A stretch of 64,000 nucleotides of DNA, taken from the IMG/VR virus record IMGVR_UViG_3300032770_000002, positions 62,001 to 126,000 of that record; one strand, 5' to 3'. The position numbers were made by a program, and so were the translations under genes. The notes under the pieces were generated by a model. That model saw only the letters and a list, made by a program, of their open reading frames with translations. It did no database searches and had not been told where the DNA came from. Shown piece by piece: positions 18,940 to 39,141 of the stretch. Position 1 is the first letter of the stretch; each line of letters starts with the position of its first letter.

Positions 18940-19248
18940 CAGAAACCACACCCACTCTTTTTCGTGCTGAGCCAGAACAACGGTGAAGCCGACTTTGAGA
19001 TATATGACCCTAACAATGTCCGTTCGGCCGTTCAGTCAATGTATGCTGAAGAAGGCAACGAATGTTCCGGAAATATCATCCTGTCGGTCATGGTTCGTGA
19101 TGTTAAGACGAATCGACCAGGACACCTGGAGTTGATGGCCGTCGTTGACGGCGAGGTTCAGGTCTTCGACGACCATTTTGCCCAAGTTGAGATGGACCCC
19201 GCATTGTGTTCAAACCCTAATCCACGGCAGAATTCCGAAAAACGCTAA
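18934..19248 (+). CDS. Hypothetical protein
   Basis: 104 aa, TAATG overlap with next gene. Confidence 0.6.
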   Translation: MNQKPHPLFFVLSQNNGEADFEIYDPNNVRSAVQSMYAEEGNECSGNIILSVMVRDVKTNRPGHLELMAVVDGEVQVFDDHFAQVEMDPALCSNPNPRQNSEKR

Positions 19249-19799
19249 TGAAAGCACTATTCTACGGCTCACTACGAAACGGTTTCCGCAATCACGACGT
19301 CGCCAGGGGAGCTAAGCTCGTTGGGCCTGGCAGGACGCTCCAGAACTTTAGGCTCTTTGTTCACTTTCGCGGCGGCGAGATGGGCATCCCCACGGCCATC
19401 CCAGACGAAACGGGCTATCCCCTGGTCGGTGAGGTCTATGAACTGCCACCGGCCGTTGCCGAGACTGTCGACTGGCTTGAGCATGGCTATTCCAAGAAGC
19501 ACGTCGACGTCAAGTTAAACGGTGTCCTTACCAGCGAGCCTGGGTCAAAGTTCAGCGTGGTGACTGATGGTGACGTCATTCCAAACGTGCTCGTCTATTG
19601 CTGCGAGTCGCTCGACTTGTCCGGATACCGAACGGCCGAAGAGGTCGAAGCCACGACGGGTGATTATGCTGACGTCTGCACCAAGTATGGCAAGCGGATT
19701 CAGACGCCCATTGACTGGCAGGTTCAGCCCATCCGGTCGACCGAACTTTTTCAGTGTGACATTGACGACAATGAAAACGAAGACATACACGCACGTTGA
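19248..19799 (+). CDS. Gamma-glutamylcyclotransferase (AIG2/GGACT-like)
   Basis: LFYGSLRNGFRNH, VGEVYE, DWLEHGY. Confidence 0.85.
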   Translation: MKALFYGSLRNGFRNHDVARGAKLVGPGRTLQNFRLFVHFRGGEMGIPTAIPDETGYPLVGEVYELPPAVAETVDWLEHGYSKKHVDVKLNGVLTSEPGSKFSVVTDGDVIPNVLVYCCESLDLSGYRTAEEVEATTGDYADVCTKYGKRIQTPIDWQVQPIRSTELFQCDIDDNENEDIHAR

Positions 19800-19939
19800 C
19801 CAGTCTGGAATGAAATGGCGCTTTGAAGGCGCCCGGCCTGTTTCTGAGCTTGCGGACTCCGTGATGTCTGGCGTTCACTCTCTCAGGCCCATAAAACCTC
19901 TCTGGAGACAGCGGAGGCGCAAAGCGGCCAGGCGGTGAA

Positions 19940-19976
19940 AATTTTTGTTTACAAAGCGCGGCAATTGTGATATAAT
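19940..19976 (+). promoter_or_regulatory. Early promoter (T4-early-like)
   Basis: TTTACA 19948-53, 17 bp, TGTGA-TATAAT 19971-76; ATG 7 nt downstream. Confidence 0.85.
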
Positions 19977-19983
19977 CCACTCC

Positions 19984-20817
19984 ATGAAGATTGGCTTTGA
20001 ATACGAAGGCGTCATCCTTGACGAGGACAACAAAATCGTTCGGTGGACCAAAATTCCACTCAAGCGGCAGTTCCGGATCAAGACCAAGATGGACATGATG
20101 GACGTCAAGCAGGACCCGATCGACACCTACGATTGCCTGGCTGAAGTCAGAACCGAGCCGCTGGAAAACAAGACTCCACGTGAGCTTGTCGTCGCCTTGC
20201 GCGACGCAATTCAAACGGCCGATCGGGCATTTAGCTCTGAGGGCTACAGCATCTTCTGGGGTGAGATGCGAGTTCCAAAGTCACTCCACAATGAAATTTT
20301 AGCACACATCGAATTTACTAAGGAGTTCAAGAAAGAAACACGCACGCTCGACCACGGGTGTGACCAACATTACGAGTCTGAAGGAAACGTTTGGCGCGGT
20401 GGTGGCCTGCACGTCAACGTCAGCCCAATGCCAAAGCCGATGGTGACGGCGATGGCCGTTAATCTTCACACTGTGCTGCACGACCTGATTGATAATTGGG
20501 CACTCAACTCAAACTATCGGAATAACCTTCTCTGGCGTCATCGCGAAGTGCGTGACAAAGAAGGCGTCGTGACCGACAAGATCGGTGAGTATATGTCATT
20601 CGGGTTTAACCTCGAGGACGTTGGCCCATTGGATATTTGGGAGGAGGCCTCGTCACACTGGTCAAGTTATTATCCGATCCAGTGGATGACTAAGATTCAC
20701 AACGAACTTATGCTGCTCGTCCACGGCGAAGACAACACTGAGTGGGTTGATCACGAGACCACTGAGGCGTATCTTCGCCTTAAGAAGGCCGAAGTTGAAG
20801 TCCTCCAAGACGCATGA
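19984..20817 (+). CDS. COOH-NH2 ligase (glutamine synthetase fold), phiEco32 type-2-like
   Basis: IGFEYE, LAEVRTEP, GGGLHVN, GEY.S.GF. Confidence 0.6.
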   Translation: MKIGFEYEGVILDEDNKIVRWTKIPLKRQFRIKTKMDMMDVKQDPIDTYDCLAEVRTEPLENKTPRELVVALRDAIQTADRAFSSEGYSIFWGEMRVPKSLHNEILAHIEFTKEFKKETRTLDHGCDQHYESEGNVWRGGGLHVNVSPMPKPMVTAMAVNLHTVLHDLIDNWALNSNYRNNLLWRHREVRDKEGVVTDKIGEYMSFGFNLEDVGPLDIWEEASSHWSSYYPIQWMTKIHNELMLLVHGEDNTEWVDHETTEAYLRLKKAEVEVLQDA

Positions 20818-21014
20818 CATTGCCACTTGAAATACTGAAGAAGGCCATCGAGCGCGGCGTTGTAGTCAGCCTCTGGAAAGACAGGCGTGGCCAATACACG
20901 TGTGAGATGAGCTATCCACGTTGGGCCGGTAGCGTGTGCGTGTCATCGAAGACGCTTAAGAAGGCCATCAAGCAGGTTTGGAAGGACGTGCGTAACCTTG
21001 ATTCAGCCGATTAA
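20814..21014 (+). CDS. Hypothetical protein
   Basis: 66 aa, ATGA coupled. Confidence 0.5.
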   Translation: MTLPLEILKKAIERGVVVSLWKDRRGQYTCEMSYPRWAGSVCVSSKTLKKAIKQVWKDVRNLDSAD

Positions 21015-21456
21015 AAAGCGAAGTCAGTTTGACGGCTTCTTCATCAGCCAAGAAGTTGACAGTTTTCTTGATGAGTTACGGAAAATCGGTGAAGAGCCTG
21101 GGGCTTTCAAACACTACCGCATTGCCATCGACTCTGACCGACGCCAGTTGGAAGAAGGACGAGTGCTACTCAAGACGTGGGCCGAGGCCGATAAGGTTGG
21201 TGATTTTGTCGCCATTGTGGACCGCCGAGGGACGGCTGGAAAACACCGCACCATCATGCTCAAGGACATCCGCGTCTTTGGCGTCAAGTTCGTCCTGGAG
21301 CATCACATCTGGGTCCACTATACAAAACTATGGCAGCGGGTCGAACCGTTCGTTCAGGGTCAAAAGGTGCTGGTCCATGGACGCGTCATTCCCTATGAGC
21401 GCGAGGACGGAAGCGTCGACTACACGATTCTTCCTGAAAAGGTCATCAAACTATGA
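20998..21456 (+). CDS. Hypothetical protein with OB-fold-like C-terminus
   Basis: FVQGQKVLVHGRVIPYEREDGSVDY. Confidence 0.55.
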   Translation: MIQPIKKRSQFDGFFISQEVDSFLDELRKIGEEPGAFKHYRIAIDSDRRQLEEGRVLLKTWAEADKVGDFVAIVDRRGTAGKHRTIMLKDIRVFGVKFVLEHHIWVHYTKLWQRVEPFVQGQKVLVHGRVIPYEREDGSVDYTILPEKVIKL

Positions 21457-21758
21457 ACGTTCCTAAACCAGATCCGAATGTTGAAGCTCCTTCCTTTGAA
21501 TATCAAAGTTGGGGATGTGATCCTAAACTGGCTGAGAAAATGAACAAGAAAAGTAATTCAAAAACCAAAGGCCCGTATTTCCAAGGGCAGCAGACATCAG
21601 CGAACTGTGGTTGCTACTACCCTGACGTTTCTCGCACGCCAAGTGGCGGCTTGTATTGTTTCGAACATGGCTGGATTCGCGGCCCAATAAATGAGGACGA
21701 GAAGCCAACTGAAGCGTGGCGTAACATTGAGCTTAAGCGCTTGGAAGAGGAAGGGTGA
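21453..21758 (+). CDS. Hypothetical protein (CGC...CFEH)
   Basis: 101 aa, ATGA coupled. Confidence 0.5.
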   Translation: MNVPKPDPNVEAPSFEYQSWGCDPKLAEKMNKKSNSKTKGPYFQGQQTSANCGCYYPDVSRTPSGGLYCFEHGWIRGPINEDEKPTEAWRNIELKRLEEEG

Positions 21759-21759
21759 C

Positions 21760-22887
21760 TTACGGGTTTCCAACCGGCATCTTCTGCATAAAGCCTTCGT
21801 CACTTCCTGAAACGTCAATCTTGCCAGCGGCCACGATCTTCTCCACGTCTTCTTCCGGCGCGTAGTTGACGACAATCAGCCCTTCAGGTTCATTTTGCCA
21901 GTAGTCCAGGTTCATTGGGTCATCGTAAATCATCTGGGAAATCTTGGCTCCTGCCGCGATCTCAAGTGACTTTACCTTGACTGGCATGCTACGTGGGACG
22001 GCCGCGCTACGCAACGTTGCGGCTGCGTTGCATGTTATCTGAGCTTCAGCGCCCGGACCGCTTGGCCCGGTGGCGCCTTGGTTGCCACTTTGAAACTTCA
22101 AACTGGAGGCAAATGTTACTGGACCGGCCGTGTATGTGTGGGTTCCTATTGACTTATCGTAAAGGACGTTGTCCGTGAAATAGGTGGAGTCACCACCGAC
22201 TGGCGTGTCCTCGCTTAATGAGCACAATCCTCGTGTGACCACCCGCTCGACAGGCCGCTGTTCCTTTGAGAGGAAGAAGCTGATCCCAATGGCGAATACC
22301 CGGTCGGCCTTCAGGATCGCCTTGGCCACACTCCGGACTTCATTGGCCGTAAAGACATACTGACGTATGGCCCCGTCTTCAGCGCGAAACCCGTCAATCC
22401 AGAGGCCACCTCGTGGCGTCCCTGTGCTGCAGAGGTAATTTTGCTTTGGCCACTTAAAGTTGCACTGGGCACAAAATCGGTCAGGTCCAAACGGCTTCTT
22501 GTGTTTTGGGCACTCGTCACGATATTGCTCAAGCGTCGCGTCCTTACATGGAAGCCCAGTGATGGCGTTGACGCCTTGGATGCTGACGACGATGGCCGCG
22601 TGATTCGTCGTGTGGTGAAGGCAGTCATTGAAGTCAAGCCACAGCCCACGGTCTTCCTTGACGGCGACGAAGTAGGATTTGACCCGGCCTGAGCTGCGCA
22701 TCCAGTGCGGTGGACATGCTGGGTATTCATCGACCAAGAAAGCGCGGCGAGGGTGGTGAGGTGGAAGGCCGTGCACCTGTTCCACGCTACCTTGCACTAG
22801 AGACTTCAGAGCAGCTGGCAGGTTGAGGACGGCGGTTAGTCCATTGACGGACATGAATCGGTCATTTGTGGAAGAGTCAAAGTTCAT
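21760..22887 (-). CDS. Uncharacterised conserved-looking protein
   Basis: 375 aa; LWLDF, VNAITG, QNY, WIDGF...GAIRQYV, AAGAKISQMIYDDP. Confidence 0.7.
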   Translation of the reverse strand: MNFDSSTNDRFMSVNGLTAVLNLPAALKSLVQGSVEQVHGLPPHHPRRAFLVDEYPACPPHWMRSSGRVKSYFVAVKEDRGLWLDFNDCLHHTTNHAAIVVSIQGVNAITGLPCKDATLEQYRDECPKHKKPFGPDRFCAQCNFKWPKQNYLCSTGTPRGGLWIDGFRAEDGAIRQYVFTANEVRSVAKAILKADRVFAIGISFFLSKEQRPVERVVTRGLCSLSEDTPVGGDSTYFTDNVLYDKSIGTHTYTAGPVTFASSLKFQSGNQGATGPSGPGAEAQITCNAAATLRSAAVPRSMPVKVKSLEIAAGAKISQMIYDDPMNLDYWQNEPEGLIVVNYAPEEDVEKIVAAGKIDVSGSDEGFMQKMPVGNP

Positions 22888-22898
22888 GGCATATGAGC

Positions 22899-22934
22899 GA
22901 AGCTGGCCGCCAAGAGTGACGACCAGCTTCTTTT
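22899..22934 (+). terminator. Hairpin GAAGCTGG...CCAGCTTC followed by TTTT
   Basis: 8-bp perfect inverted repeat plus T4 in an intergenic gap. Confidence 0.45.
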
Positions 22935-22944
22935 GGGTTGAGGT

Positions 22945-23817
22945 CTAGTAGTTGCGTTTAACGCCAAACGGGTTGTTTGATTTGACGTCGACGTTGCGTA
23001 ATGAAACGCGGAGCTTAGGCAACTCATCACGCTGCTTGAGCTGGCGGAAGTTTAAGTCAGCTTCCGGGTAGGCGTTGGCCAGGTTTGAGGTGTCATCATT
23101 CGGGTTTGTGGCCCGCTCGATGAGGCGAAGGACGGCTTCAGTGTTGTTGGTGTCAATTTCACCGCGCTCGACGACGATTCTGATGAACTTCCGGCAGTTT
23201 GGCTGCACGTTATTCCAGTTGCGGTGGTTGACGGTGCTGTAGCCGCCACGAAGCGGCTTGCCAGGGAACATCGGGTCCTCATCGACCATCTCGTTTGGAA
23301 GGACACCCGCGGGATAGAGCGTCACCAAGCGGCCGTCCACCAACGTGGCCGTGACGCCTTCGGTCACCAGTCCCTGTTCGAAGTCGTTGATGAAGTTAAG
23401 CGTCTCCTCAACGGCGACGGTGCCGTCATCGTGGAAGGCGATGAATGGCCTGTCACCGAATCGCTTCTTCAGCGCGACGGTGATGGGGTCCGACGGCTTG
23501 CCAGGCAGGTAGTTCCGCAATAGCTCATCGACCCCGATGGTGTCGAGATTGGGCTTGATGCCCATGTTTTTGAGCACCTCAGTGCGGTTGCCAGATTTTT
23601 CACCAGCTTTTCCACCCTTGAGGGCCGAAAAGGCCATGCGAGCCACGATGGGCGACTTGTCCTTGAAGACCTCGCGAAACTCACCGAACTTGAGGTCATC
23701 ACCATCGAGGGCTTCAACACCCATCTCGGGTGTGAGTCCACTGATCTCTTGAAACTTTTCGATGGAGAGTCCGAGAAGCTTTGCGGCCTTGGAGACACGG
23801 TCATTCCAGTCATTCAT
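22945..23817 (-). CDS. Uncharacterised protein
   Basis: ATG 23817 (MNDWNDRV); DEDPMFPGKPL motif. Confidence 0.7.
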   Translation of the reverse strand: MNDWNDRVSKAAKLLGLSIEKFQEISGLTPEMGVEALDGDDLKFGEFREVFKDKSPIVARMAFSALKGGKAGEKSGNRTEVLKNMGIKPNLDTIGVDELLRNYLPGKPSDPITVALKKRFGDRPFIAFHDDGTVAVEETLNFINDFEQGLVTEGVTATLVDGRLVTLYPAGVLPNEMVDEDPMFPGKPLRGGYSTVNHRNWNNVQPNCRKFIRIVVERGEIDTNNTEAVLRLIERATNPNDDTSNLANAYPEADLNFRQLKQRDELPKLRVSLRNVDVKSNNPFGVKRNY

Positions 23818-23914
23818 ACAGTCATTCACTTTCAATCGCGTCGATGTGTTTTGGCCAGTTCCCGCTCGACGGCAACGGCTGGCTGACACCGTTAAAGTGT
23901 CACTCCTAAGAACA

Positions 23915-24163
23915 CTATTGTGAGACGACTACATTAGTTGCAGACGTGGAGACAACCTTGGACGACGTGAAACCGATGGAGGTTGAAAACGTGGGAGCCG
24001 ACGTGATGACGGCTCCCACGGCCACAGTTTTTACGGCCTGCGTTACTTGATTCGTGCCACTAGAAACCAGGCCAATGCCGATAATGAGCGTGCGATGTTG
24101 ACCGATCGGGACGCACCCGGTGAGCAGCAGGCTCAAACCGACGATGATCCTTATCGAGGACAC
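23915..24163 (-). CDS. Small predicted lipoprotein
   Basis: IIVGLSLLLTG-C lipobox. Confidence 0.6.
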   Translation of the reverse strand: MSSIRIIVGLSLLLTGCVPIGQHRTLIIGIGLVSSGTNQVTQAVKTVAVGAVITSAPTFSTSIGFTSSKVVSTSATNVVVSQ

Positions 24164-24720
24164 GGACGCGGTAAGATGTGCTGCGCCTGCGATTCAGGCC
24201 GAATGGCCGATTTTAGGCCAATTGAGCGTGAGAGCACTTGGCGTCCAAGCGCCTGGTTAAAGCCGTCTTGGATTGCCGTTGCGAACTCGACGACAACCGG
24301 CGCGTTGCTGGCCAGGTTTGACTGGACATACTGGCCGTAGTAGAGCTGGTAGAGGTCAACGACCGAACCGATTGCAATTTGGACGTAAACGTCGTGGAGC
24401 ACCGGGACGTTGATCGACAACAGGTCTTGTTGAAGAGCACCTGGCGTGTAATTCGTCCTGGAGATAAACGTGCCAAGCGCGTCGCTTGCGGCAGCGAAAT
24501 AAGCGGCGTTATTGGTCTGACCGGTTGGCGGCGTAATTGCGGCAAGTGCTCCGGCTCGAGCGACGCCTCGAAGGACGACGGCCGCCGCGTCGATGTTGGC
24601 CTGACTTGGAGGTTGATTTGACCCCGGTGGCATGGTTGTGCAGGCTTCAAAGACGGATGCGGTGATGATGGACGCAAGGCTCAAGACGACGATGGAGACG
24701 AGTTTCACAGTGTTTTTCAT
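24151..24720 (-). CDS. Secreted/lipoprotein-like hypothetical
   Basis: MKNTVKLVSIVVLSLASIITASVFEAC hydrophobic N-terminus. Confidence 0.6.
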   Translation of the reverse strand: MKNTVKLVSIVVLSLASIITASVFEACTTMPPGSNQPPSQANIDAAAVVLRGVARAGALAAITPPTGQTNNAAYFAAASDALGTFISRTNYTPGALQQDLLSINVPVLHDVYVQIAIGSVVDLYQLYYGQYVQSNLASNAPVVVEFATAIQDGFNQALGRQVLSRSIGLKSAIRPESQAQHILPRPCPR

Positions 24721-24736
24721 ATGTGGCTAACTACCG

Positions 24737-24949
24737 GTGCGGGTTCTTGAAGATCAAGTGAAATTTGTGATTAAGCAGGCCAATGCGGACCAGTTTATTG
24801 GCGTTTACGAAGGCCGATACTTCTGGACACCTTCACTGATTACCCGGCGATTCTTTGGGTCGCGTGCCGAGGCCCAAAGGTTCATCCGAAAACACTCCTT
24901 AAGCGGGGTTGAACTCGTTGAGGTCCCATGCCCGGTAAGCGCTACCTGA
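24737..24949 (+). CDS. Hypothetical protein
   Basis: 70 aa upstream of the methylase. Confidence 0.5.
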   Translation: MRVLEDQVKFVIKQANADQFIGVYEGRYFWTPSLITRRFFGSRAEAQRFIRKHSLSGVELVEVPCPVSAT

Positions 24950-25887
24950 AGTTTTTCAACTGGCCTGGATCGAAAGTTCGTGTCCTTCCATGGCTGTTGC
25001 CAAAATTTGAGATAGCCGATCGTGGACTTTACGTCGAGCCATTTCTTGGCTCTGGGAACGTGTGGCTGAATGTCCCTGAAAAGTTCAGCCAATACATCCT
25101 GAATGACAAGGTCCCCTACGTCATTCGGTTCTTCAAGGCCATGGCCGACGTTTCATGCCGCGTGGCCTTGCTTGAACAACTTGAACGATTGCGGGCCACT
25201 TACCCAGTAAAACCGTCGCCTAAGTTAAAGCAAAAAATTGTCAACCACGCTGAGTTGACGCCTGATGAAGTAGAGCAGCGCAACACGTTAAAGCAAAGCT
25301 ATTACAATCTTCGTGACAAGTGGAATGGGCATCGGCGTGAAAACCTTAATAACGCGGCAAATTTAACCTGGTCTAACGCGGCCTTTGCGTATCTCTGTGG
25401 GGCCTGCATCAACAACCTTGTCAGGTTTGGAAGCAACGGAAACTTTAATCAAGGGTGGGGACAGCGAGAGCTTGACTTGAATTCATTCGGATTGGTTGCC
25501 GACCGAGTCGCCCACCGAAATAATCGGACGTGGTTTCACACGCATGACTTCAACAGTCTGCTCAGCAACATCAGTGTGAGAGGCCTGCTTTCACGGAGCG
25601 TGGTCTACCTTGATCCGCCGTATGGCACGCGGTCCGAGGCGAGGGTCAACGGGCTTTACGGATTGGAAAATTCATGGACGGCTGAAAATGACCAAGCCGT
25701 CATGGCATGGTGTCTGGCCATCCACAAGGCTGACGGGCTCTTTGTCCTGTCAAATTTGATGGAGAATCCAGGCGTGGCGAGACTGATTCAGGAGTTCAAC
25801 GTCCAAGTCGTGCCAATCAAGTATAAGGCGTCCGTTGGACGGCACGAAGTTCGTGAACAAACTGAGGTCATCATCTCGAATTTCTAA
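24928..25887 (+). CDS. dam: N6-adenine DNA methyltransferase, Dam/D12 class
   Basis: WPGSK, YVEPFLGSG (motif I), ILND, VYLDPPY (motif IV). Confidence 0.9.
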   Translation: MPGKRYLKFFNWPGSKVRVLPWLLPKFEIADRGLYVEPFLGSGNVWLNVPEKFSQYILNDKVPYVIRFFKAMADVSCRVALLEQLERLRATYPVKPSPKLKQKIVNHAELTPDEVEQRNTLKQSYYNLRDKWNGHRRENLNNAANLTWSNAAFAYLCGACINNLVRFGSNGNFNQGWGQRELDLNSFGLVADRVAHRNNRTWFHTHDFNSLLSNISVRGLLSRSVVYLDPPYGTRSEARVNGLYGLENSWTAENDQAVMAWCLAIHKADGLFVLSNLMENPGVARLIQEFNVQVVPIKYKASVGRHEVREQTEVIISNF

Positions 25888-26096
25888 TGGCGTGGGACCC
25901 AATAGTCAAAGTCACCAGCGATGATTATTCCTGATATGGCAAGATCGTCAAGGACGACGAGAATGGCCTGGTAATTGACGGCATTTGGCCTCCTGATCCT
26001 GACACTGCCAGACGGTGGGTCTTTGCGCCACACCAGTCTGGGGAGTTTGTCACAACGGCTTCCATGTCCATGGGTTTTCGATACCCATTTCGACAT
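25884..26096 (-). CDS. Hypothetical protein
   Basis: 70 aa convergent ORF. Confidence 0.35.
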   Translation of the reverse strand: MSKWVSKTHGHGSRCDKLPRLVWRKDPPSGSVRIRRPNAVNYQAILVVLDDLAISGIIIAGDFDYWVPRH

Positions 26097-26237
26097 TCGT
26101 TAAAATTCAAGGCATCATTGGAGATGGTCAATGAAATGAGACGGGCCGTAAAGGCCATAATGTCAACGTGACAAACATTTTCGATGTCAACGTGGCGAAC
26201 ATTGTTCTCACCCGCGTTATTGGCGTAGTTATGACAA

Positions 26238-26456
26238 ATGGACGCCCGAGCGACGATTGACCACCTCATTGAGCAGGACCACTTGCGCTCCCTGCAGAAG
26301 AGCCTCTTTGCCCGGGCCATGCGTCTCTTTGATGACGGTTACACCCCCGACGAGATCTTCCAAGTCGTCAAGAAAACTGACGGACAGTTACCGGCTCACT
26401 TTGTCGACACGGTCAAGTCCGCGTGGCAGGAATATCGAAGGCGCGGGTTCGCATGA
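26238..26456 (+). CDS. Leader-bearing small protein (MDARATIDHLIE)
   Basis: Shared leader; similar to 10732..10920. Confidence 0.7.
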   Translation: MDARATIDHLIEQDHLRSLQKSLFARAMRLFDDGYTPDEIFQVVKKTDGQLPAHFVDTVKSAWQEYRRRGFA

Positions 26457-27535
26457 GGGCCAGAGACTCCATTGACGTCCTCTTCGAGTCGATTGAGGGT
26501 CTTGGCTCACGCAAGGTTGGGATTGAGCTTGAGATTCTCGTCCTCAGCAAATTCAAGCGTCAGTTTCAACAGCTTGCCAGAAGCTTGGACATTGGCGTTG
26601 GCTCAGACTTTTCAATGGAAAAGCGGCACGAAGGGTTTGAGCAATTTTATGGGACGGTCGAAATTGACATCGGCCGACGCCCATGGACTGAGATCGAGGG
26701 CCGACTGACTCAACTGACAAGTTGGCTGCGCCACGAGGTGCCAATAAAATTCAAGTCGCAAGCAAGGCCGCGAGTTCCAGCGCGAGAGCATGAAATTCAC
26801 CTTCCAATTGGTCGCGTCTCGCAGACCATGACCGGCGCGTTGCACATTCACTTTGACATCGATGATTGGTTTCGTGACCACGACCACTTTCGCTCGTTTT
26901 TGGCCGTGTTCAACGAGTTCCTCGACCGCGGCGACCTCGAGTCGATGGTGGCCAAGTCGCGCTACGCCGTTGCGCCAAAGAAGTCCAAGTTCGACACCTC
27001 GAGCCCATATGGACAGGGACACGAGTATGCCAAGCCTTGGCCAGCTCCAGTTCCAAGGCCAACTGACGTAAAGCGATTTCAGAACCTTCCATCCGACGAG
27101 CTGACGACGATGTCTGCCGGGTCCAAGACCGTTCGGCGCAAGTTGACGTTTGACACGTCTCGCGTGCGTGACTTTGTCCGGTGGTGGGCCAAGGAGATGG
27201 ATGTGGACCGGCTTCAGGCGGTAAATCTGCTGTCGTCATGGGACCACGGCACGCTGGAGTTTCGATTCCCAAACGCGACGCTCAGCATCAGCGCAATTTC
27301 AGGGTGGGTGGAATTTCTGGCTGGTCTCATCAACTTTAGCCGCGACAAGAATTACGGCCAGTTTTTGTGGGCCTCACGGCGAGGTGAACACAAGACAATC
27401 GGTCAGTTCATGGACAAGCGCAAGGCGGCCCATGGGCACCCACAGTTTCCGCCGCCGTGGGACAGGTATGACTACGAGGTGCCAAGGTCTTATCGGAAAT
27501 TGGGCCTCGAGTCATTGCAGCCGCTGTCAATGTAA
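26453..27535 (+). CDS. Putative amidoligase (Amidoligase_2, GS fold) with leader MRARDSIDVLFE
   Basis: VGIELE, GTVEI, GALHIHF, HGTLEFRF. Confidence 0.8.
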   Translation: MRARDSIDVLFESIEGLGSRKVGIELEILVLSKFKRQFQQLARSLDIGVGSDFSMEKRHEGFEQFYGTVEIDIGRRPWTEIEGRLTQLTSWLRHEVPIKFKSQARPRVPAREHEIHLPIGRVSQTMTGALHIHFDIDDWFRDHDHFRSFLAVFNEFLDRGDLESMVAKSRYAVAPKKSKFDTSSPYGQGHEYAKPWPAPVPRPTDVKRFQNLPSDELTTMSAGSKTVRRKLTFDTSRVRDFVRWWAKEMDVDRLQAVNLLSSWDHGTLEFRFPNATLSISAISGWVEFLAGLINFSRDKNYGQFLWASRRGEHKTIGQFMDKRKAAHGHPQFPPPWDRYDYEVPRSYRKLGLESLQPLSM

Positions 27536-27635: not shown

Positions 27636-28568
27636 ATGACAAACACGACCAAACTGCCAAAAAACCTGAAATTCACTCGAAGCGGCCAGCAACTTTCTGG
27701 CATTGTCACCCGCATCTCTGCCGAAGTCCAGCTCCAAGACGGCCGCCGCGTTTTCAAGACCCTGACTGACGAAGACCTCTGCCCGACTGAACCAGCGCTC
27801 GCTCCGACCGATGACTCCCAAGCGCAAGTCATGGTCGAGACGCCGACGTGGACGATCATGCAGAAGTTTGACTTCATGGCCAACCTCATCCGCATGGTCA
27901 TTGACGACGTGACGTGCTCCCTGGTCATCACCGGGTCTGGCGGCCTTGGCAAGACCAGCAGCGTCTTTGAAGCGCTGAAGCGGGCGAGCCTGACAGCCGA
28001 CCGCGACTTTGTCGTCCTGAAGGGCTACACCACGCCACGCGGTTTTTACGAATATCTGTATCGCAACAATGGCCGGCTCATCATCGTTGACGACTGCGAC
28101 GCCGTCTTCAAGACGCAGACCGGCGTGAACATCCTCAAGGCGGCGCTTGACTCTTTCGAAGACCGCACCGTCAGCTGGCAGTCGCGTGAGCGCGCCGCCT
28201 CGAGCGAGGACGAAGAGGGTGACGACTCGGTCCCCAACTCCTTTGAATTTTCCGGCCGAATCATCTTCATCAGCAACCTGTCACACGACGACGTCCCACA
28301 GCCTGTTCGCAGCCGCTCGATGAACATCGACCTGACGATGAATGTCCAGGAACGCCTTGACCGAATCAACTACCTGATGCCGGTTCTCGCCAGCAACGAG
28401 GAAGTGACGATGGACCAAGCCAAGGAGTGCTTCGACCTCATCGTGGCGAATCAGAGCCTCATCAAGGACATCAACATCCGCACGGCCATCATGACGCTGC
28501 GCATTCGGAAGACCAACAGCGACGTCATCTGGAAGGACATGGCCACGTTCCAACTGCTGCACAATTAA
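27636..28568 (+). CDS. P-loop AAA-type ATPase (conserved phage family)
   Basis: ITGSGGLGKT (Walker A), IIVDDCD (Walker B), NILKAALD, IIFISN, VRSRS. Confidence 0.82.
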   Translation: MTNTTKLPKNLKFTRSGQQLSGIVTRISAEVQLQDGRRVFKTLTDEDLCPTEPALAPTDDSQAQVMVETPTWTIMQKFDFMANLIRMVIDDVTCSLVITGSGGLGKTSSVFEALKRASLTADRDFVVLKGYTTPRGFYEYLYRNNGRLIIVDDCDAVFKTQTGVNILKAALDSFEDRTVSWQSRERAASSEDEEGDDSVPNSFEFSGRIIFISNLSHDDVPQPVRSRSMNIDLTMNVQERLDRINYLMPVLASNEEVTMDQAKECFDLIVANQSLIKDINIRTAIMTLRIRKTNSDVIWKDMATFQLLHN

Positions 28569-32565: not shown

Positions 32566-32577
32566 TTCTACGTAGAC

Positions 32578-33291
32578 GTGAGATTTTATGTCTATGTGTT
32601 GATTGTTCGTCCTGGTGGCACCGTTTGCTACGTTGGTAAAGGGACCAAGAATCGGATGCACGTTCATCGTAAAGCCACATTTCAGACGTCTCGTCAAACC
32701 ATCAGTCTCTATCGCCGTCTTCGTGAGTTAATCATTTCTGGCAAAGATTTTGAACCGGTTAAGGTCTTTGAAAGTGACGATGAATTTAGGGCTTTGCAAG
32801 AAGAGAAACGCTTAATCGACATTTACGGATTAGACAATTTGTTTAATTCAACCAATGTTAACTGGGCCGTTGACTGGACCGAGGCTAGACGCCAAGCTAT
32901 TTCGCTTGGCGTCAAAAGATACGCGGAAAGATGTAGACAACTTTACGGTAAAGGAGTTTCACCCGAACATTCAATTGCAATCTCACGTGGTCACATTTAT
33001 AGAGTTCCAGTTAGTCAAGAAACACGCCAAAAGATGTCAATGTCTAGTCGCCATAAGCATTATCCGCGTAAGTTGCAGACACTCCCAATTAATCGAAAGC
33101 CAGTCAATTCAAAATCAAAGTTTAAAGGAGTGAGCTGGAATAAGCCACACTGTCGATGGGTGGCCAGGCTGTGGTCGCCTGAACTTCGAAAAAACCTTGT
33201 GCTTGGAAGTTCCAAAACTGAAACTATTGCGGCCACTATTTACGATGATGTTATTGAAAAACTATTTGGTTTGAGACCGAATCAAACATGA
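32578..33291 (+). mobile_element. Free-standing GIY-YIG homing endonuclease with AP2-like C-terminal DNA-binding domain
   Basis: FYVYVLI...CYVGKG..NR..H; SKFKGVSWNK..RWVARL...LG; visibly AT-richer than its flanks. Confidence 0.8.
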
Positions 33292-33647: not shown

Positions 33648-33987
33648 TTGGAAAGGCATCAACTTCAGGAAGATCGTTGAGAATGCCTTGACGGTCCTTG
33701 TGACGTCGGTGTTTCTTGGTGCCGGAGTCATCGTGTGGAATGGGGCGACAACGGTTGACCAGCGAGTCAGGTCCACTGAAGACGGTTTAAAGTCGTTGAT
33801 CGACAACCTCTCGACCAAATTATCAAGCTATGAAGTCCAACTCCAGGCCCAGAGCAACCAGCTAGCCGAAGTCTACGCTGAAGTCAAGCGGTTGCACCCG
33901 ACTCACACTTACACCAACGCCCCGCGTGAGTTTATGCAACAGCGTGCCGTCGAACAGGACATTCGACGGCAACTGTTGAAGAAGTAG
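33640..33987 (+). CDS. Membrane-anchored coiled-coil protein (spanin/holin-like)
   Basis: One TM (ALTVLVTSVFLGAGVIVW) followed by a heptad-rich tail. Confidence 0.5.
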   Translation: MSNWKGINFRKIVENALTVLVTSVFLGAGVIVWNGATTVDQRVRSTEDGLKSLIDNLSTKLSSYEVQLQAQSNQLAEVYAEVKRLHPTHTYTNAPREFMQQRAVEQDIRRQLLKK

Positions 33988-33991
33988 CGCG

Positions 33992-34450: not shown

Positions 34451-34453
34451 GGT

Positions 34454-34981: not shown

Positions 34982-34992
34982 ACGAATAAGAA

Positions 34993-35562: not shown

Positions 35563-35789
35563 AATCTGTCATGAAATTTCGTAGCGGACTTTGTTTAGAA
35601 AGAGTCGGCGAGCAGATTGCTCCACTCGCCGGGCACAGGCACTAGTGGCCCGTTGACCGCAAAGAGTTGGGACCTCGTGGTCCGAAGGCCGCGGTCCTAA
35701 GAGCATGGCCTGCGCTCAGCAGAACACCGACAGGTTTTTCGACATCGTGCATTGTTTTGTAAACAGATTTGTCGCCAGGCACGATTAAA

Positions 35790-35825
35790 ATTTTTGTTTA
35801 CAAAATCACGTTGGCGTGGTATATT
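35790..35825 (+). promoter_or_regulatory. Early promoter (T4-early-like)
   Basis: TTTACA 35797-802, 17 bp, GTGG-TATATT 35820-25; ATG 6 nt downstream. Confidence 0.82.
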
Positions 35826-35831
35826 TCTGGC

Positions 35832-36035
35832 ATGAATGAAGACGAAGTCAGGCTTCTCCTTGAGCAGCATGGCCTGCGATTTCACAAACGCTCGAACGGG
35901 CTGGTCGTCGTTTCAGGGCAACCGGCCTTAGACACATTGGTGAAGGCCGTCAACGCGGCGATTGAACGGACGCTTCGCGCTGATGCCAGCTCGAACCTTT
36001 CACACATTATGGCTCGATTGCAAAATTTTCCGTAA
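35832..36035 (+). CDS. Hypothetical early protein
   Basis: Leaderless-type ATG at 35832. Confidence 0.55.
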   Translation: MNEDEVRLLLEQHGLRFHKRSNGLVVVSGQPALDTLVKAVNAAIERTLRADASSNLSHIMARLQNFP

Positions 36036-36046
36036 AGTCAAACCGC

Positions 36047-36523
36047 ATGAAATCCAACGACGTCAGTGCCAGAACGGGTGTGGTTATCTCAATGAAAACA
36101 TTAACGGACATCTGCAGCAAGCTTGTGACCGCACTGCGTGACGTTAGAGCCCGCCTGCCGTTGGATGGCGCTGACAAGGTGCAATACGTGCAGGAGGTGC
36201 TTGACAGGGCCGACCGCGTCGTTGACGACTCGAAGATGTTCCTCGAGGCAAGAAAGAAGGTCATGACCTTCCGTGAGTTTTTCGACTCCCACTTTGCGAC
36301 GGCTTCGGCTTGGTGCGTCATCACCATCAAGCACCCAAACTTGGCCGCTTGCTCCGCCATCGTGCTCCAGTGGGAGCCGAGCAACTACAAGTGGTATCGG
36401 CCAAATCCAATTGAAGGCCGCGAGGAGTGCGGCTCTTACGACAGCATCGGCCCAATCCCCGAATATGGCGGCATCAAAGGTGAGGTCGAAGGAATTCGCG
36501 TTCTCGTTTCTGACATTGTCTGA
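36047..36523 (+). CDS. Hypothetical protein
   Basis: 158 aa. Confidence 0.55.
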   Translation: MKSNDVSARTGVVISMKTLTDICSKLVTALRDVRARLPLDGADKVQYVQEVLDRADRVVDDSKMFLEARKKVMTFREFFDSHFATASAWCVITIKHPNLAACSAIVLQWEPSNYKWYRPNPIEGREECGSYDSIGPIPEYGGIKGEVEGIRVLVSDIV

Positions 36524-36546
36524 CCACCAACAAAAAGGAAAATAGT

Positions 36547-36759
36547 ATGATGAAGTTCATCGCAGTCTGCCTCGACGTCCTTGTCCAGGCCCAAAAGGAA
36601 GGCGCCTCCATGCGCGACCTCTACAAGATCGCTCAAGCCGCTGACATGCCGAAAGGCCCGTTTAGCACCTTCTGCACCTACTACTGGACCATTCGCAAGA
36701 TGCCGGCCAAGCGGCGCAAGGACATCCTGAAGCCGAAGATGGAAGTGGTCAGGGATTGA
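36547..36759 (+). CDS. Hypothetical basic protein
   Basis: 70 aa. Confidence 0.55.
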   Translation: MMKFIAVCLDVLVQAQKEGASMRDLYKIAQAADMPKGPFSTFCTYYWTIRKMPAKRRKDILKPKMEVVRD

Positions 36760-36765
36760 ATTTTA

Positions 36766-36849
36766 GGGAGCGCGCGTTCCGCCGTGATCCCACAATCCCG
36801 GACCCGCCGTTGGCGAGCTAGCCGGGCTTCACAAAGGAACCGCGCTCCC
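36766..36849 (+). ncRNA. Candidate rod-like structured RNA (84 nt), family unknown
   Basis: Nested pairings GGGAGCGCG/CGCGCTCCC, GTTCC/GGAAC, GTGA/TCAC, CCCGG/CCGGG, CGCC/GGCG fill an intergenic gap. Confidence 0.55.
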
Positions 36850-36869
36850 GCTCTTTTGAGATACACCCA

Positions 36870-37343
36870 ATGAACAAGGACAAGTGCCCAAAGTGTGGCG
36901 GAACTGGCCAACTTTTACAGGATGAGGTCGACATTGGAGTCGGCATGCAGCGAGTGACCACCGGCTTTGAGTGCGACACCTGTGGCCAAATTTCATATTG
37001 CTCGTCATGCGGCGCGTGGGACTTTCAACCGCACGCCAAGTGGTGTGCTGCCAAGGTGGACGACGTGGATGAAAAATTGGTCCGCGAGATGGTCCTCTTT
37101 GCGTGGGTCGGCGAGGACGAAATGGGCAGCGGTGAGTTCGGCTTAAAGCAAGGATTGACCCAACTCGGACTCATTCCACTCGTCGCCTGCAAGGAAGGCA
37201 AGATAGACCAGCTTACCTTGATCGAGCAGTTGAAAAATCAAGCCAAGCTCTTTAAGAAGACCATTCGCCTCGCCAAGTTCAAGTTCGACTCAATCGAAAT
37301 TACCATCACGCCTGACGGAGCGGCGCAGCGAACTGACAGTTAG
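36870..37343 (+). CDS. Zn-finger hypothetical (CPKC, CDTC, CSSC..H..C)
   Basis: 157 aa. Confidence 0.6.
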   Translation: MNKDKCPKCGGTGQLLQDEVDIGVGMQRVTTGFECDTCGQISYCSSCGAWDFQPHAKWCAAKVDDVDEKLVREMVLFAWVGEDEMGSGEFGLKQGLTQLGLIPLVACKEGKIDQLTLIEQLKNQAKLFKKTIRLAKFKFDSIEITITPDGAAQRTDS

Positions 37344-37346
37344 GCT

Positions 37347-37832
37347 GTGAAATCGCGTTCGCTTATCGACGCACTGGTGTTCAACAACCCGTCCGACCTT
37401 GTGTCGATGACGGAGTCGTTTGACCTTCATCCAAAAAATGACTCGTCAAGATTCAGTGTTTCGAGTTGGGTGTGGAAGGCCCTGCTGTGGGTGATCGAGA
37501 GTTCGGCCGCGCTCGCTGGGCTCGCCATTGACTTTGACTACTGGGACTCCAATGACAACCGCGGACTAGGAACCCAGGCCGAGTGCGATGAACTGGCCGA
37601 CGCCATTGAAAAGTTTATTCGCGGCCGGTCAGATGACTTCGTCTTTCACCGCCCATTCAGTGAGGGTGAAAAGCAAAGCATCGTCTTGATGCTCATCAAC
37701 AGCACCGGGTCAACGCAAGCTGACGCTGAGGACTTTGTTCGGCGTGAGACAAAACACTACGTCGTTGACGTCGCGACGATTCGCGAGTTCATCGCATTCC
37801 TACGCCAGTGCGGCGGCTTCGAAATCGGCTGA
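37347..37832 (+). CDS. Leader-bearing hypothetical (MKSRSLIDAL)
   Basis: Variant leader; TGATG overlap with next gene. Confidence 0.65.
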   Translation: MKSRSLIDALVFNNPSDLVSMTESFDLHPKNDSSRFSVSSWVWKALLWVIESSAALAGLAIDFDYWDSNDNRGLGTQAECDELADAIEKFIRGRSDDFVFHRPFSEGEKQSIVLMLINSTGSTQADAEDFVRRETKHYVVDVATIREFIAFLRQCGGFEIG

Positions 37833-38083
37833 TGAAGGCGTGGCACTTATACATTGTCCGGTGTGTGGACAACTCGCTTTACACAGGCATCACGACTGAC
37901 GTGGCCCGCCGAGTCGTGGAGCACAACACGTCGCCACGTGGCGCCCGCTACACGCGGTCAAGGCGGCCGGTAGAGCTGGTGTGGAAGAGCCTTGGCGTTG
38001 AGCGGTCATTTGCGGCCAAGGCAGAAGCGAAGTTTAAGACCTACTCGAAGCGGCAGAAAGAGGAATTTCTGAAGATGCTATGA
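37832..38083 (+). CDS. Small GIY-YIG nuclease (YhbQ/UPF0213-like)
   Basis: WHLYIVRCVDNSLYTGITTDVARRVVEHN...GARYTRSRRPVELVW. Confidence 0.88.
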   Translation: MKAWHLYIVRCVDNSLYTGITTDVARRVVEHNTSPRGARYTRSRRPVELVWKSLGVERSFAAKAEAKFKTYSKRQKEEFLKML

Positions 38084-39141
38084 TCCTTCACGAGGTCAAC
38101 CTCAACCAAGGCCGAATTGGCGTCGAGATGGAAATGCTCATTCGCCTCGACCTGTCACGCGACGCGGACACGCACGTGACTGACCCTCGTTTCAGGGCCA
38201 AGATGCGCCAGGTCTTCACTGACTGTGGCTTCACCCTCGGTGATGACCCAACGGTCATTCAGCACAGCCTCTCAACGGACATCTTTTACGCCAGCTTTGA
38301 GACGGCCAACCAGGAGCTTGAGGGCGCGGCGTGGAGCGACCTTGAGCCAAGGCTGACGGCGCTCCTTTCATGGCTGAAGCGCAACGACCGAGTTTGGGTT
38401 GACCGGATGTCTCACGCTGTCACCACCATACCGCAGTCTGGAGCGTCCTGGGCTGACACGGTGCTGCCGAGGGCCAAGATGCCGAACAACACGACGTGTG
38501 GGCTGCACATTCACTTCCACGCTGAAGACTGGTTCGGTGACTTTGACCACGCCATCCGCTTTGTCCAGCTGTGGAACCGCTCACGCGACTTCTTCAAGAA
38601 ACTGGCCCACCCGGCTCGGTATAAGACTGGCCAAGGCTACGTGGCCACCGGCGACGAGCACGCCGACATCAGCAAGCCGATGAGCGTCCCAACACCAGAC
38701 ACGGTGCGCAGGCTGAAGGCCGAGTGGGAAATGACGCCGACTGGCTATCAGGTTCGTAAAATCCTCAAGTGGATGTCACTGCACCGGTGGACGGCGCTCA
38801 ACACGACGCGGGTTGAATTTCGCAAGGACATTGAGTTTCGGCTGGCCCATGGGACGATGAACATTGGCACCATCACGCACTGGGTGAGCATGTTCGCGTC
38901 GCTCATTGAAGCCGCGAAGGAGACACGCATGCCGTCAACCTTTACGCGATACATGTGGAGTGAGGAGCGCCCGCTGATGGTTGACTACCTCAAGCGCAGT
39001 GGAAAGCTGGCCAAGGCCGACACGTCACACGCCGCGCCCTATGACCTTCCAAAGCGAATGGGCCGTCCCATTCGCCGACTGCTCTACCCGCAAAACGCCA
39101 AATTTATCCCAGTCAAAAGTGAAGGCGCGGCAACTCATTGA
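38080..39141 (+). CDS. Putative amidoligase (Amidoligase_2, GS fold)
   Basis: IGVEME, TCGLHIHF, RWTALN, DIEFRLAHGT. Confidence 0.82.
   Translation: MILHEVNLNQGRIGVEMEMLIRLDLSRDADTHVTDPRFRAKMRQVFTDCGFTLGDDPTVIQHSLSTDIFYASFETANQELEGAAWSDLEPRLTALLSWLKRNDRVWVDRMSHAVTTIPQSGASWADTVLPRAKMPNNTTCGLHIHFHAEDWFGDFDHAIRFVQLWNRSRDFFKKLAHPARYKTGQGYVATGDEHADISKPMSVPTPDTVRRLKAEWEMTPTGYQVRKILKWMSLHRWTALNTTRVEFRKDIEFRLAHGTMNIGTITHWVSMFASLIEAAKETRMPSTFTRYMWSEERPLMVDYLKRSGKLAKADTSHAAPYDLPKRMGRPIRRLLYPQNAKFIPVKSEGAATH

What the first reader, a model, noticed from the sequence alone, without database searches (positions are those of the whole stretch)
19248..39141. Dispersed peptide/amide-ligation toolkit: GGCT plus three GS-fold ligases, one carrying the packaging-type leader
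Seen: GGCT (19248), a COOH-NH2 ligase-like gene under its own early promoter (19984), and two Amidoligase_2-like genes (26453, 38080) retaining ExE, HxH and ExR. The 26453 copy begins MRARDSIDVLFE; the 38080 copy begins MILHE and sits in the leader-gene block. Established: phage phiEco32 encodes COOH-NH2 ligase, amidoligase and GGCT gene sets predicted to make gamma-glutamyl-type amides; their substrates are unresolved. Inference: at least one amidoligase may be virion-delivered to modify a host target or metabolite immediately on entry, with GGCT reversing or recycling the product.
Basis: partly seen in the sequence, partly recalled or inferred. Interest (0 to 1): 0.65.

Follow-up and report, generated by a model that had tools for sequence, protein, structure and literature searches.

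The report
Jumbo-phage amide-ligase toolkit with leader tag
An uncultivated 230-kb wetland phage carries a gamma-glutamyl cyclotransferase and three glutamine-synthetase-fold ligases in this stretch (seven such ligases genome-wide), and one ligase bears an N-terminal tag shared by about 25 unrelated phage proteins that looks like phage T4's capsid-targeting signal, so the enzyme may be packed into the virion; this is untested.

Summary
19248-19799 is a GGACT-type gamma-glutamyl cyclotransferase. 26453-27535 and 38080-39141 are paralogous Amidoligase_2 enzymes that keep ExE, HxH and ExR. 19984-20817 has a glutamine-synthetase/GCL/PafA-type fold and its own near-consensus sigma-70 promoter, which gives a leaderless mRNA.

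Corrections:
- The 19984 gene is not a Pfam COOH-NH2_lig member. It belongs to a small unnamed family (50 clusters among 1.84 billion proteins) that sits beside true COOH-NH2_lig, Amidoligase_2 and GGACT genes in other phage contigs.
- The toolkit is larger than reported. The 230-kb genome has four more Amidoligase_2-like genes, one of them fused to WGR, and a class-II glutamine amidotransferase.
- Amidoligase genes here repeatedly neighbour AAA+ ATPases.

The leader M-x-A-R-x-x-I-D is real: 20 strict and about 27 relaxed start-anchored copies, against 0-3 in shuffles. It is conserved in all three orthologues of the 26453 ligase. It is often followed by [I/L]-x-E, and the phage encodes a T4 gp21-type (S77) prohead protease.

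Virion delivery is therefore plausible but unproven. Substrates remain unknown. I rate this a new variant of the known, uncharacterised phage amidoligase system.

The parts
17766..17794 (+). Sigma-70-type promoter (TTTACA-17-TG-TATATT) of the operon that ends with GGCT. Its first ORF starts 10 nt downstream at 17805.
19248..19799 (+). Gamma-glutamyl cyclotransferase (GGACT/AIG2-like), 183 aa, with YGSL and the putative catalytic Glu. Its start overlaps the stop of the upstream gene.
19817..19833 (.). GC-rich hairpin just after the GGCT stop; a possible operon end.
19948..19976 (+). Near-consensus sigma-70 promoter (TTTACA-17-TG-TATAAT, 11/12) ending 7 nt before ATG 19984, which predicts a leaderless mRNA.
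19984..20817 (+). GS/GCL/PafA-fold carboxylate-amine ligase of a small unnamed family, 277 aa. Invariant residues are E6, E8, D47, E54, E94, R138, H143, R179 and E202.
26238..26456 (+). 72-aa leader-bearing small protein, coupled to the amidoligase by an ATGA overlap. The pair is conserved in L013 and L024. The C-terminus carries a conserved (Y/F)RRR.
26453..27535 (+). Amidoligase_2 enzyme, 360 aa, carrying the N-terminal leader MRARDSIDVLFE ahead of the first strand (residue 21).
27636..28568 (+). AAA+-like ATPase (phrog_1250) with Walker A GSGGLGKT and Walker B IIVDD. It lies downstream of the amidoligase here and in L013 and L024.
37347..37832 (+). Leader-variant gene (GTG start, VKSRSLID). 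Its orthologue directly precedes the amidoligase in L025.
37808..38083 (+). Small GIY-YIG nuclease. It is present in L023 and absent in L025, so it is probably a mobile insert and not part of the system.
38080..39141 (+). Amidoligase_2 paralogue, 353 aa, without leader, embedded in the leader-gene block.
39119..39760 (+). Leader gene with a GTG start (KARQLIDD), overlapping the end of the amidoligase by 23 nt.
39757..41695 (+). Three further leader genes, starting at 39757, 40518 and 41330. They lie upstream of a weakly P2-gpI-like gene at 42611.

Best explanation
The interval holds four genuine enzyme genes of an expanded phage amide-bond toolkit. There are three glutamine-synthetase-fold ligases: two Amidoligase_2 paralogues and one member of a small unnamed family. 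By the known chemistry of the fold, such ligases activate a carboxylate as an acyl-phosphate with ATP and join it to an amine. The fourth gene is a GGACT-type cyclotransferase, which removes a gamma-glutamyl group with a free alpha-amine as 5-oxoproline.

These genes belong to a genome-wide set of seven such ligases plus a Cys1 class-II glutamine amidotransferase. The set is a dispersed and enlarged version of the COOH-NH2 ligase / amidoligase / GATase / GGCT system of phiEco32- and LUZ24-like phages.

I infer, without direct evidence, that the ligases make gamma-glutamyl-type or isopeptide amide bonds on macromolecular targets, most likely proteins, during takeover or assembly. I also infer that GGCT works with the 19984-family ligase, either trimming or reversing its product or using gamma-glutamyl as a transient group.

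The 26453 ligase carries a short leader shared by about 25 unrelated phage proteins. I read that leader as a T4-like capsid-targeting and processing signal cut by the phage's S77 prohead protease. On that reading this ligase would be packaged and delivered with the DNA.

Shown: gene identities, folds, catalytic motifs, the promoter, the statistics and conservation of the leader, and synteny. Inferred: substrate class, the role of GGCT, and packaging.
For: Enzyme identities.

Genome-wide set. The GATase starts MCAII behind its own promoter.

GGCT with the 19984-family ligase: the two are adjacent in a 57%-identical relative and lie within 2 kb in a distant 108-kb phage contig that also has PF14395 and Amidoligase_2. 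The 19984 family lies near Amidoligase_2 in L011, L013 and G001 and near PF14395 in L020.

Lean towards protein targets:
- An AAA+-like gene follows the 26453 ligase in three phages.
- A VAT/CDC48/PAN-like AAA lies beside the WGR-amidoligase.
- A small conserved protein is translationally coupled to the ligase.

Leader:
- 20 strict copies against a mean of 0.2 in shuffles; binomial p 2e-12.
- 30 relaxed copies against 0-3 in shuffles.
- It sits on non-homologous proteins.
- It is kept in the orthologues of the 26453 ligase.
- [IL]xE follows in 13/20 leaders against 25/332 other proteins, p 1.6e-9.
- An S77 protease lies next to the major head protein.
- Residues 1-12 of the ligase model lie outside the fold.

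The T4 capsid-targeting sequence (CTS) is described in PMC5694885.
Against: - No substrate evidence of any kind.
- No expression or virion data; only one DNA run holds the sequence.
- The sigma-70-type promoter class suggests early or host-RNAP transcription for the GGCT operon and the 19984 ligase, and the 38080 ligase and following leader genes lie downstream of such a promoter at 35797. That fits virion proteins less well.
- 7 of 20 leaders lack [IL]xE.
- Leader genes cluster beside a weakly baseplate-like gene rather than the head genes.
- A WGR fusion, a divergent thymidylate-synthase paralogue and a PurZ-like gene next to other amidoligase copies point to nucleic-acid or nucleotide targets instead.
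- Folding the small protein with the ligase gave no verdict.
Confidence: 0.45

Rival explanations
1. DNA or nucleotide hypermodification. The amidoligases, with the GATase, would add or amidate amino-acid-like groups on modified bases or nucleotide precursors. GGCT would remove a gamma-glutamyl protecting group.
For: - Lee et al. report amidoligase and amidotransferase genes co-associated with thymidine-hypermodification clusters in viral contigs (PMC8989533).
- In this genome one amidoligase is fused to a WGR domain.
- Another lies 0.75 kb downstream of a divergent thymidylate-synthase paralogue.
- Another is the divergent neighbour of a PurZ-like adenylosuccinate synthetase.
- A Dam-like methyltransferase lies 0.5 kb upstream of the 26238/26453 pair.
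Against: - No 5-hmdU DNA kinase helical domain in the genome.
- None of the three ligases in the flagged interval sits next to a nucleotide-metabolism gene in the relatives.
- This reading explains neither the AAA+ partners nor the leader.
Confidence: 0.2
2. Small-molecule or cell-envelope chemistry, as proposed for phiEco32. The ligases and GATase would make or amidate a gamma-glutamyl-type metabolite or cell-wall precursor, for example to block superinfection or rewire nitrogen or glutathione-type metabolism. GGCT would recycle the product.
For: - The cell-wall and superinfection proposal of Iyer et al. 2009 is summarised in PMC10580990.
- An auxiliary nitrogen-metabolism reading appears in PMC10945688.
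- Lipoprotein genes lie between the ligase genes here (23915-24720, minus strand) and in L013.
- GGCT enzymes are known to act on small gamma-glutamyl compounds (established knowledge).
- A 19984-family gene lies beside an NAD-salvage cluster in L011.
Against: - Seven very divergent paralogues with targeting-type additions (WGR, Pro/Ser/Thr-rich tails, leader) are not what a metabolic gene set looks like.
- No NCBIfam equivalog hit.
- The two lipoproteins are not homologous.
- The AAA+ partners are left unexplained.
Confidence: 0.2
3. The leader is not a packaging signal. It would instead be a recognition tag for the amidoligases themselves or for an AAA+ partner. The ligases would then modify the invariant acidic residue of leader-bearing, perhaps tail or baseplate, proteins during assembly.
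For: - The 38080-type amidoligase sits inside the leader-gene block in four phages, namely the window, L021, L023 and L025.
- The 26453 ligase is coupled to a small leader protein in three phages.
- Position 8 of the leader is Asp in 19/20 and Glu in 1/20, and position 4 is always Arg.
- The block abuts a weakly P2-gpI-like gene.
Against: - No precedent known to me.
- The enrichment of [IL]xE together with an S77 protease is explained better by proteolytic processing.
- Folding the small leader protein with the ligase gave no verdict.
Confidence: 0.1

Closest known systems
Phage COOH-NH2 ligase / Amidoligase_2 / class-II GATase (with or without GGCT) gene sets of phiEco32 and LUZ24-like phages such as UFV-P2, tf and PaP3 (Iyer et al. 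2009; PMC3890496)
   Same: The same enzyme types are present: Amidoligase_2, a Gn_AT_II GATase with Cys1, and a GGACT-type cyclotransferase. They are phage-borne and their substrates are unknown.
   Different: - The genes here are dispersed over 230 kb rather than in one operon.
- There are six Amidoligase_2-like paralogues rather than one.
- No PF14395 gene is present; a separate small GS-fold family takes that place.
- tblastn against 50,697 phage records finds no match.
- One copy is fused to WGR and one carries the leader.
PafA/Dop with the Mpa AAA+ unfoldase (pupylation)
   Same: GS-fold ligases are paired with AAA+ ATPases of the CDC48/PAN clade. PafA and Dop are among the structural matches, Z 7.7-8.3.
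   Different: - No Pup-like tag with a C-terminal Gly-Gly-Gln/Glu was found.
- There is no proteasome.
- The relation is at fold level only.
- No binding has been shown.
YbdK/GCS2, gamma-glutamylcysteine ligases and glutamine synthetases
   Same: The fold is shared, as is the acidic/His/Arg metal- and ATP-binding constellation. Best Z values are 8.8-10.6.
   Different: - Sequence identity is 9-16%.
- No sequence-level hit to PDB chains.
- The proteins are much shorter (277-360 aa) and lack the N-terminal beta-grasp domain of GS.
T4 capsid-targeting sequence on internal proteins IPI-III, cut by gp21, and the packaged enzyme Alt
   Same: A short N-terminal tag is shared by unrelated proteins and is often followed by [I/L]-x-E. 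An S77 (gp21-family) protease lies next to the major head gene. An enzyme is among the tagged proteins.
   Different: - The sequence differs: M-x-A-R-x-x-I-D.
- About 25 carriers are present, against a handful in T4.
- Many carriers lie beside a putative baseplate gene.
- Neither cleavage nor packaging has been shown.
Butirosin BtrJ/BtrG: a ligase adds a gamma-glutamyl protecting group and a GGCT-fold enzyme removes it (recalled from memory, not tested here)
   Same: It pairs an ATP-dependent gamma-glutamyl ligase with a GGCT-fold cyclotransferase.
   Different: BtrJ is an ATP-grasp enzyme, not GS-fold. No carrier protein or aminoglycoside genes are present here.

Membership tests
GGACT / AIG2-like gamma-glutamyl cyclotransferase (PF06094) | Profile score above the curated cut-off | tested here: met
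   47.5 bits against 22.8, E 3.2e-12. PHROG 2520 at E 6e-13.
GGACT / AIG2-like gamma-glutamyl cyclotransferase (PF06094) | N-terminal YGSL substrate-binding motif and a catalytic Glu | tested here: met
   FYGSLRNG occupies residues 5-12. The Glu in DWLEHGY aligns with the E-I-G region of PH0828, PDB 1v30. That pairwise alignment is weak.
GGACT / AIG2-like gamma-glutamyl cyclotransferase (PF06094) | Releases 5-oxoproline from a gamma-glutamyl amide | not testable with these tools
   Needs an enzyme assay.
Amidoligase_2 (PF12224) | Profile score above the curated cut-off | tested here: met
   26453: 32.1 bits. 38080: 36.4 bits. Cut-off 22. Confirmed on the genome.
Amidoligase_2 (PF12224) | ExE, H(x)H, R, N and ExR catalytic constellation | tested here: met
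   Invariant in all eight aligned sequences.
Amidoligase_2 (PF12224) | GS-like fold | tested here: met
   In the 26453 model, the top 18 structure matches are all GS/GCL/YbdK/PafA/Dop, Z 6.5-10.6.
COOH-NH2_lig (PF14395), for the 19984 gene | Profile score above the curated cut-off | tested here: not met
   12.7 bits against 25. None of 38 family members hits any GS-fold Pfam family at E <= 0.01. True PF14395 genes stand beside family members in two contigs.
Glutamine synthetase / GCL / PafA carboxylate-amine ligase fold, for the 19984 gene | Fold match covering the domain, standing above unrelated folds | tested here: met
   VIA-align ranks 1-19 are all of this superfamily, Z 6.0-9.3 with 161-226 aligned residues; the next fold scores Z 5.5. 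The Foldseek top hits YbdK, GS, Dop and GCL reach only E about 3e-3.
Glutamine synthetase / GCL / PafA carboxylate-amine ligase fold, for the 19984 gene | Conserved acidic/His/Arg active-site residues | tested here: inconclusive
   E6, E8, E54, E94, H143, R179 and E202 are invariant in 38 members. Their positions in the active site were not mapped in 3D. Profile-profile comparison with the amidoligases is not significant.
Iyer-type phage amidoligase system | Amidoligase, class-II GATase and GGCT present in one phage | tested here: met
   The GATase is at genome 224936-225898 and starts MCAII.
Iyer-type phage amidoligase system | A PF14395 COOH-NH2 ligase, with the genes clustered in one operon | tested here: not met
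   No PF14395 gene is present. The genes are spread over the genome.
T4-type capsid-targeting sequence | Short N-terminal tag shared by non-homologous proteins | tested here: met
T4-type capsid-targeting sequence | gp21-family prohead protease and a P1-Glu cleavage motif after the tag | tested here: inconclusive
   Peptidase_S77 at 59.6 bits. [IL]xE follows in 13/20 leaders, but 7 lack it. The specificity of this protease is unknown.
T4-type capsid-targeting sequence | Carriers present in proheads or virions and cleaved | not testable with these tools
   Needs virion proteomics. The phage is known only from a wetland metagenome.

The most novel reading that the evidence does not exclude
M-x-A-R-x-x-I-D is a capsid-targeting and processing signal that defines a cargo set of about 25 proteins in an uncultivated jumbo phage. 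On this reading the 26453 GS-fold amidoligase is packed into the head, trimmed by the S77 protease and ejected with the DNA, and it then ligates an amino acid or amine onto a host target in the first moments of infection. This would be an Alt-like injected enzyme with a chemistry (ATP-dependent amide ligation) not yet known for any virion-delivered phage protein.
Probability: 0.22. Interest if true: 0.8.

Novelty: new variant of a known kind. Interest (0 to 1): 0.6.

Why it matters
Phage amidoligase/GATase/GGCT gene sets were predicted in 2009. They are widespread and still have no known substrate.

This genome offers three new handles:
- A seven-fold expansion with telling partners: AAA+ unfoldase-like ATPases, a WGR fusion and a coupled small protein.
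- A previously unnamed GS-fold family that travels with the system.
- A ligase carrying a portable N-terminal tag.

If the tag is a capsid-targeting signal, it gives a sequence-readable list of a jumbo phage's internal or ejected proteins. It would also identify the first candidate for an injected amide ligase. Both claims can be tested directly by expressing the proteins.

Tried and rejected
**Similarity searches that found nothing**
- Megablast of 19248-27535 against 50,697 phage records: no match.
- tblastn of the 38080 and 19984 proteins against the same records: no match.
- Single-protein scans of viral contigs: nothing. The alignment-based scan found one locus.
- Sequence search of PDB with the 19984-family profile: nothing.
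- hhalign of the 19984 family against the amidoligases: probability 2%, with only the G-L-H motif aligned.
- An HMM built from the six amidoligase paralogues does not pick up the 19984 protein.

**Other negative or empty results**
- ESM Atlas search for the leader protein at 46972: no usable lead.
- The lipoproteins lying between the ligases in the window and in L013 are not homologous.
- The ORF at the 5' end of L013 is not a GGCT.
- No 5-hmdU kinase domain in the genome.
- No enriched intergenic motif other than the TTTACA promoter, so no late-promoter class could be defined.
- Sequencing runs: one DNA run from a wetland metagenome, probably the source, and no RNA.

**No verdict**
- Complex prediction of the 72-aa leader protein with the 26453 ligase: no verdict, score 0.00. 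This is evidence neither for nor against binding.

**Not available**
- The Iyer et al. 2009 paper is not held. Its content is cited from memory and through PMC10580990 and PMC3890496.

Full report
**Setting.** The window is bases 62001-126000 of a complete 230,253-bp virus record with direct terminal repeats and 54% GC. The only sequencing run that holds it is a wetland metagenome. Most genes have no Pfam or PHROG match, and no GenBank phage is similar at the DNA or protein level. Genes lack Shine-Dalgarno sequences.

About 21 sites of the form TTTACA-N16/17-TG-TATATT lie 6-9 nt upstream of an ATG, which predicts leaderless mRNAs. TGTTTACA is the only enriched intergenic word.

**The observation.**
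- GGCT, 19248-19799, is a GGACT-type gamma-glutamyl cyclotransferase: PF06094 at 47.5 bits, PHROG 2520, with YGSL and the Glu of DWLEHGY. It is the last gene of an operon that starts at the 17766 promoter and is followed by a hairpin.
- The genes at 26453-27535 and 38080-39141 pass the Amidoligase_2 cut-off. They are full-length paralogues, E 5e-23, and keep ExE, HxH and ExR. A model of the first matches only glutamine synthetases, GCLs, YbdK, PafA and Dop in its top 18 hits, Z 6.5-10.6.
- The gene at 19984-20817 starts at the ATG, not at the upstream TTG. All homologues begin MKIGxEYEG, and the 11/12 promoter with an extended -10 lies inside the TTG extension and ends 7 nt before the ATG.

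**What the 19984 gene is.**
- It has no Pfam, PHROG or NCBIfam hit. PF14395 gives 12.7 bits against a cut-off of 25.
- Its family is small, 50 clusters among 1.84 billion representatives. None of 38 members hits a GS-fold Pfam family.
- The model (pLDDT 80.6) matches GS/GCL/YbdK/PafA/Dop chains in ranks 1-19, Z 6.0-9.3, and the next fold scores 5.5. Foldseek agrees weakly.
- E6, E8, D47, E54, E94, R138, H143, R179 and E202 are invariant.
- It is therefore a GS-fold ligase of an unnamed family, not a COOH-NH2_lig member.
- Its company shows which system it belongs to. GGACT stands directly upstream in a 57%-identical relative. GGACT, a true PF14395 gene and two Amidoligase_2 genes lie within 10 kb in a 108-kb contig. 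A true PF14395 gene lies 0.8 kb downstream in L020. Amidoligase_2 genes lie 1-8 kb away in L013, G001 and L011.

**The toolkit is larger than flagged.** The genome has four more Amidoligase_2-like genes, all with the catalytic constellation:
- 26189-27217 on the minus strand, with an N-terminal WGR domain.
- 178925-180022.
- 189534-190784.
- 223787-224887.

It also has a class-II GATase at 224936-225898 that starts MCAII, giving a Cys1 nucleophile. Five of the about 21 strong promoters drive genes of this set.

The neighbours are informative:
- An AAA+-like ATPase follows the 26453 ligase here and in L013 and L024.
- A classical AAA, whose best PDB relatives are VAT, CDC48/p97 and PAN at E 1e-25, lies beside the WGR-amidoligase.
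- A DMP19-like gene and a divergent thymidylate-synthase paralogue flank 189534.
- A PurZ-like gene faces 178925.

**The leader.**
- Twenty ORFs of at least 50 aa start, on ATG, GTG or TTG, with x-x-A-R-x-x-[ILV]-[DE]. Shuffled genomes give a mean of 0.2. Of the 82 occurrences of the core in six frames, 23 sit on a start codon, p 2e-12.
- Allowing Ser at position 3 or Lys at position 4 gives 30 ORFs against 0-3 in shuffles.
- Codons vary synonymously, so the constraint is on the peptide.
- The carriers are unrelated apart from one paralogue trio.
- Fifteen carriers lie in the window: 9474, 10313, 10732, 26238, 26453, 37347, 39119, 39757, 40518, 41330, 44946, 46218, 46972, 48577 and 49389.
- All three orthologues of the 26453 ligase keep the tag: MRARDSIDVLFE, MMTARELIDE, and an in-frame NSRSFIDWLFE. 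In the model it is a low-confidence helix outside the fold.
- [I/L]-x-E starts at residues 7-11 in 13/20 leaders against 25/332 other proteins, p 1.6e-9.
- The genome encodes a Peptidase_S77 (T4 gp21 family) prohead protease directly upstream of the major head protein.
- In T4, 10-20-residue capsid-targeting sequences on internal proteins direct them into the prohead and are removed by gp21 (PMC5694885).
- The analogy is therefore well founded but untested. Seven leaders lack the motif. Many carriers lie beside a weakly P2-gpI-like gene rather than the head genes.

**Mechanism.**
- Shown: the genes, folds, motifs, promoter, synteny and tag.
- From established knowledge of the families: GS-fold ligases form an acyl-phosphate and couple it to an amine. 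GGCT-fold enzymes release 5-oxoproline from gamma-glutamyl amides that have a free alpha-amine.
- Inferred: the ligases build gamma-glutamyl-type or isopeptide bonds, GGCT works with the 19984-family ligase, and the targets are more likely macromolecules than metabolites. The grounds are the AAA+ partners, the WGR fusion, the low-complexity tails, the coupled small protein and the tag.
- Rivals, all open: DNA hypermodification (PMC8989533), envelope or metabolite chemistry (PMC10580990, PMC10945688), and the tag as a ligase-recognition signal.

**Verdict.** This is a new variant of a known but uncharacterised phage system. The tag and a possibly packaged ligase are the most interesting parts.

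Noticed in passing
window 9474, 10313, 10732, 26238, 26453, 37347, 39119, 39757, 40518, 41330, 44946, 46218, 46972, 48577, 49389; further copies outside the window (genome 12935, 31788(-), 146979, 148423, 151230, 176325, 176918, 196488(-)): An N-terminal peptide tag M-[KN]-A-R-x-[VLI]-I-D-(E) sits on about 25 mostly unrelated proteins. Variants with Lys at position 4 or Ser at position 3 occur in relatives L021, L024 and L025.
   Followed up: yes
window 17766-17794, 19948-19976, 35797-35825; about 18 more in the genome: A promoter family, TTTACA-N16/17-TG-TATATT, lies 6-9 nt before an ATG, so the first genes of operons are predicted to be leaderless. Genes in general lack Shine-Dalgarno sequences.
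   Followed up: partly
outside window: genome 177387-178379 (-), L007:7387-8379: A PurZ-like adenylosuccinate synthetase (PF00709, E 8e-18). Its tblastn hits are to PurA-like genes of Vibrio, Acinetobacter and Arthrobacter phages. The genome may contain 2-aminoadenine.
   Followed up: partly
outside window: genome 22684-23565, 188054-188782, 47776-48276 (-): Three thymidylate-synthase-family genes: one canonical (350 bits) and two divergent (55 and 33 bits). The divergent ones could be pyrimidine hydroxymethylases. One lies just upstream of an amidoligase.
   Followed up: no
outside window: genome 182191-183396: A TubZ/PhuZ-like tubulin (PF00091 and TubZ-like_C).
   Followed up: no
window 26238-26456 and 10732-10920; L013:1842-2057; L024:309-530: A small-protein family (62-74 aa) with the leader, a conserved LFA(R/K) and a C-terminal (Y/F)RRR. 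One member is translationally coupled to the 26453 amidoligase in three phages. It could be an adaptor or a substrate.
   Followed up: partly
window 24928-25887: A D12-class N6-adenine DNA methyltransferase (PF02086, E 9e-26).
   Followed up: no
window 32578-33291 and 37808-38083: Two GIY-YIG nucleases. The first has a LEM-3-like domain plus a weak AP2 hit, as in homing endonucleases. The second is a 91-aa stand-alone domain that is present in L023 but absent at the same place in L025.
   Followed up: partly
outside window: genome 150050-150277, inside the 509-aa ORF 148748-150277: An in-frame internal MSNARKVIDE followed by a 65-residue Pro-rich basic tail. It could be a nested gene or chance.
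   Followed up: no
L021:5666-5944: A Tad2-like (anti-Thoeris) gene lies 1.7 kb upstream of the amidoligase orthologue in a related 52.5-kb contig.
   Followed up: no
L011:11566-14995: An NAD-salvage cluster (QRPTase_N, NMNAT-like, NAD synthase, isochorismatase) plus RtcB lies next to a 19984-family gene in a distant 107-kb phage contig.
   Followed up: no
window 23915-24720 (-) and L013:1267-1809 (-): Lipoprotein-like genes lie on the opposite strand between the two ligase genes in both phages, but they are not homologous.
   Followed up: yes
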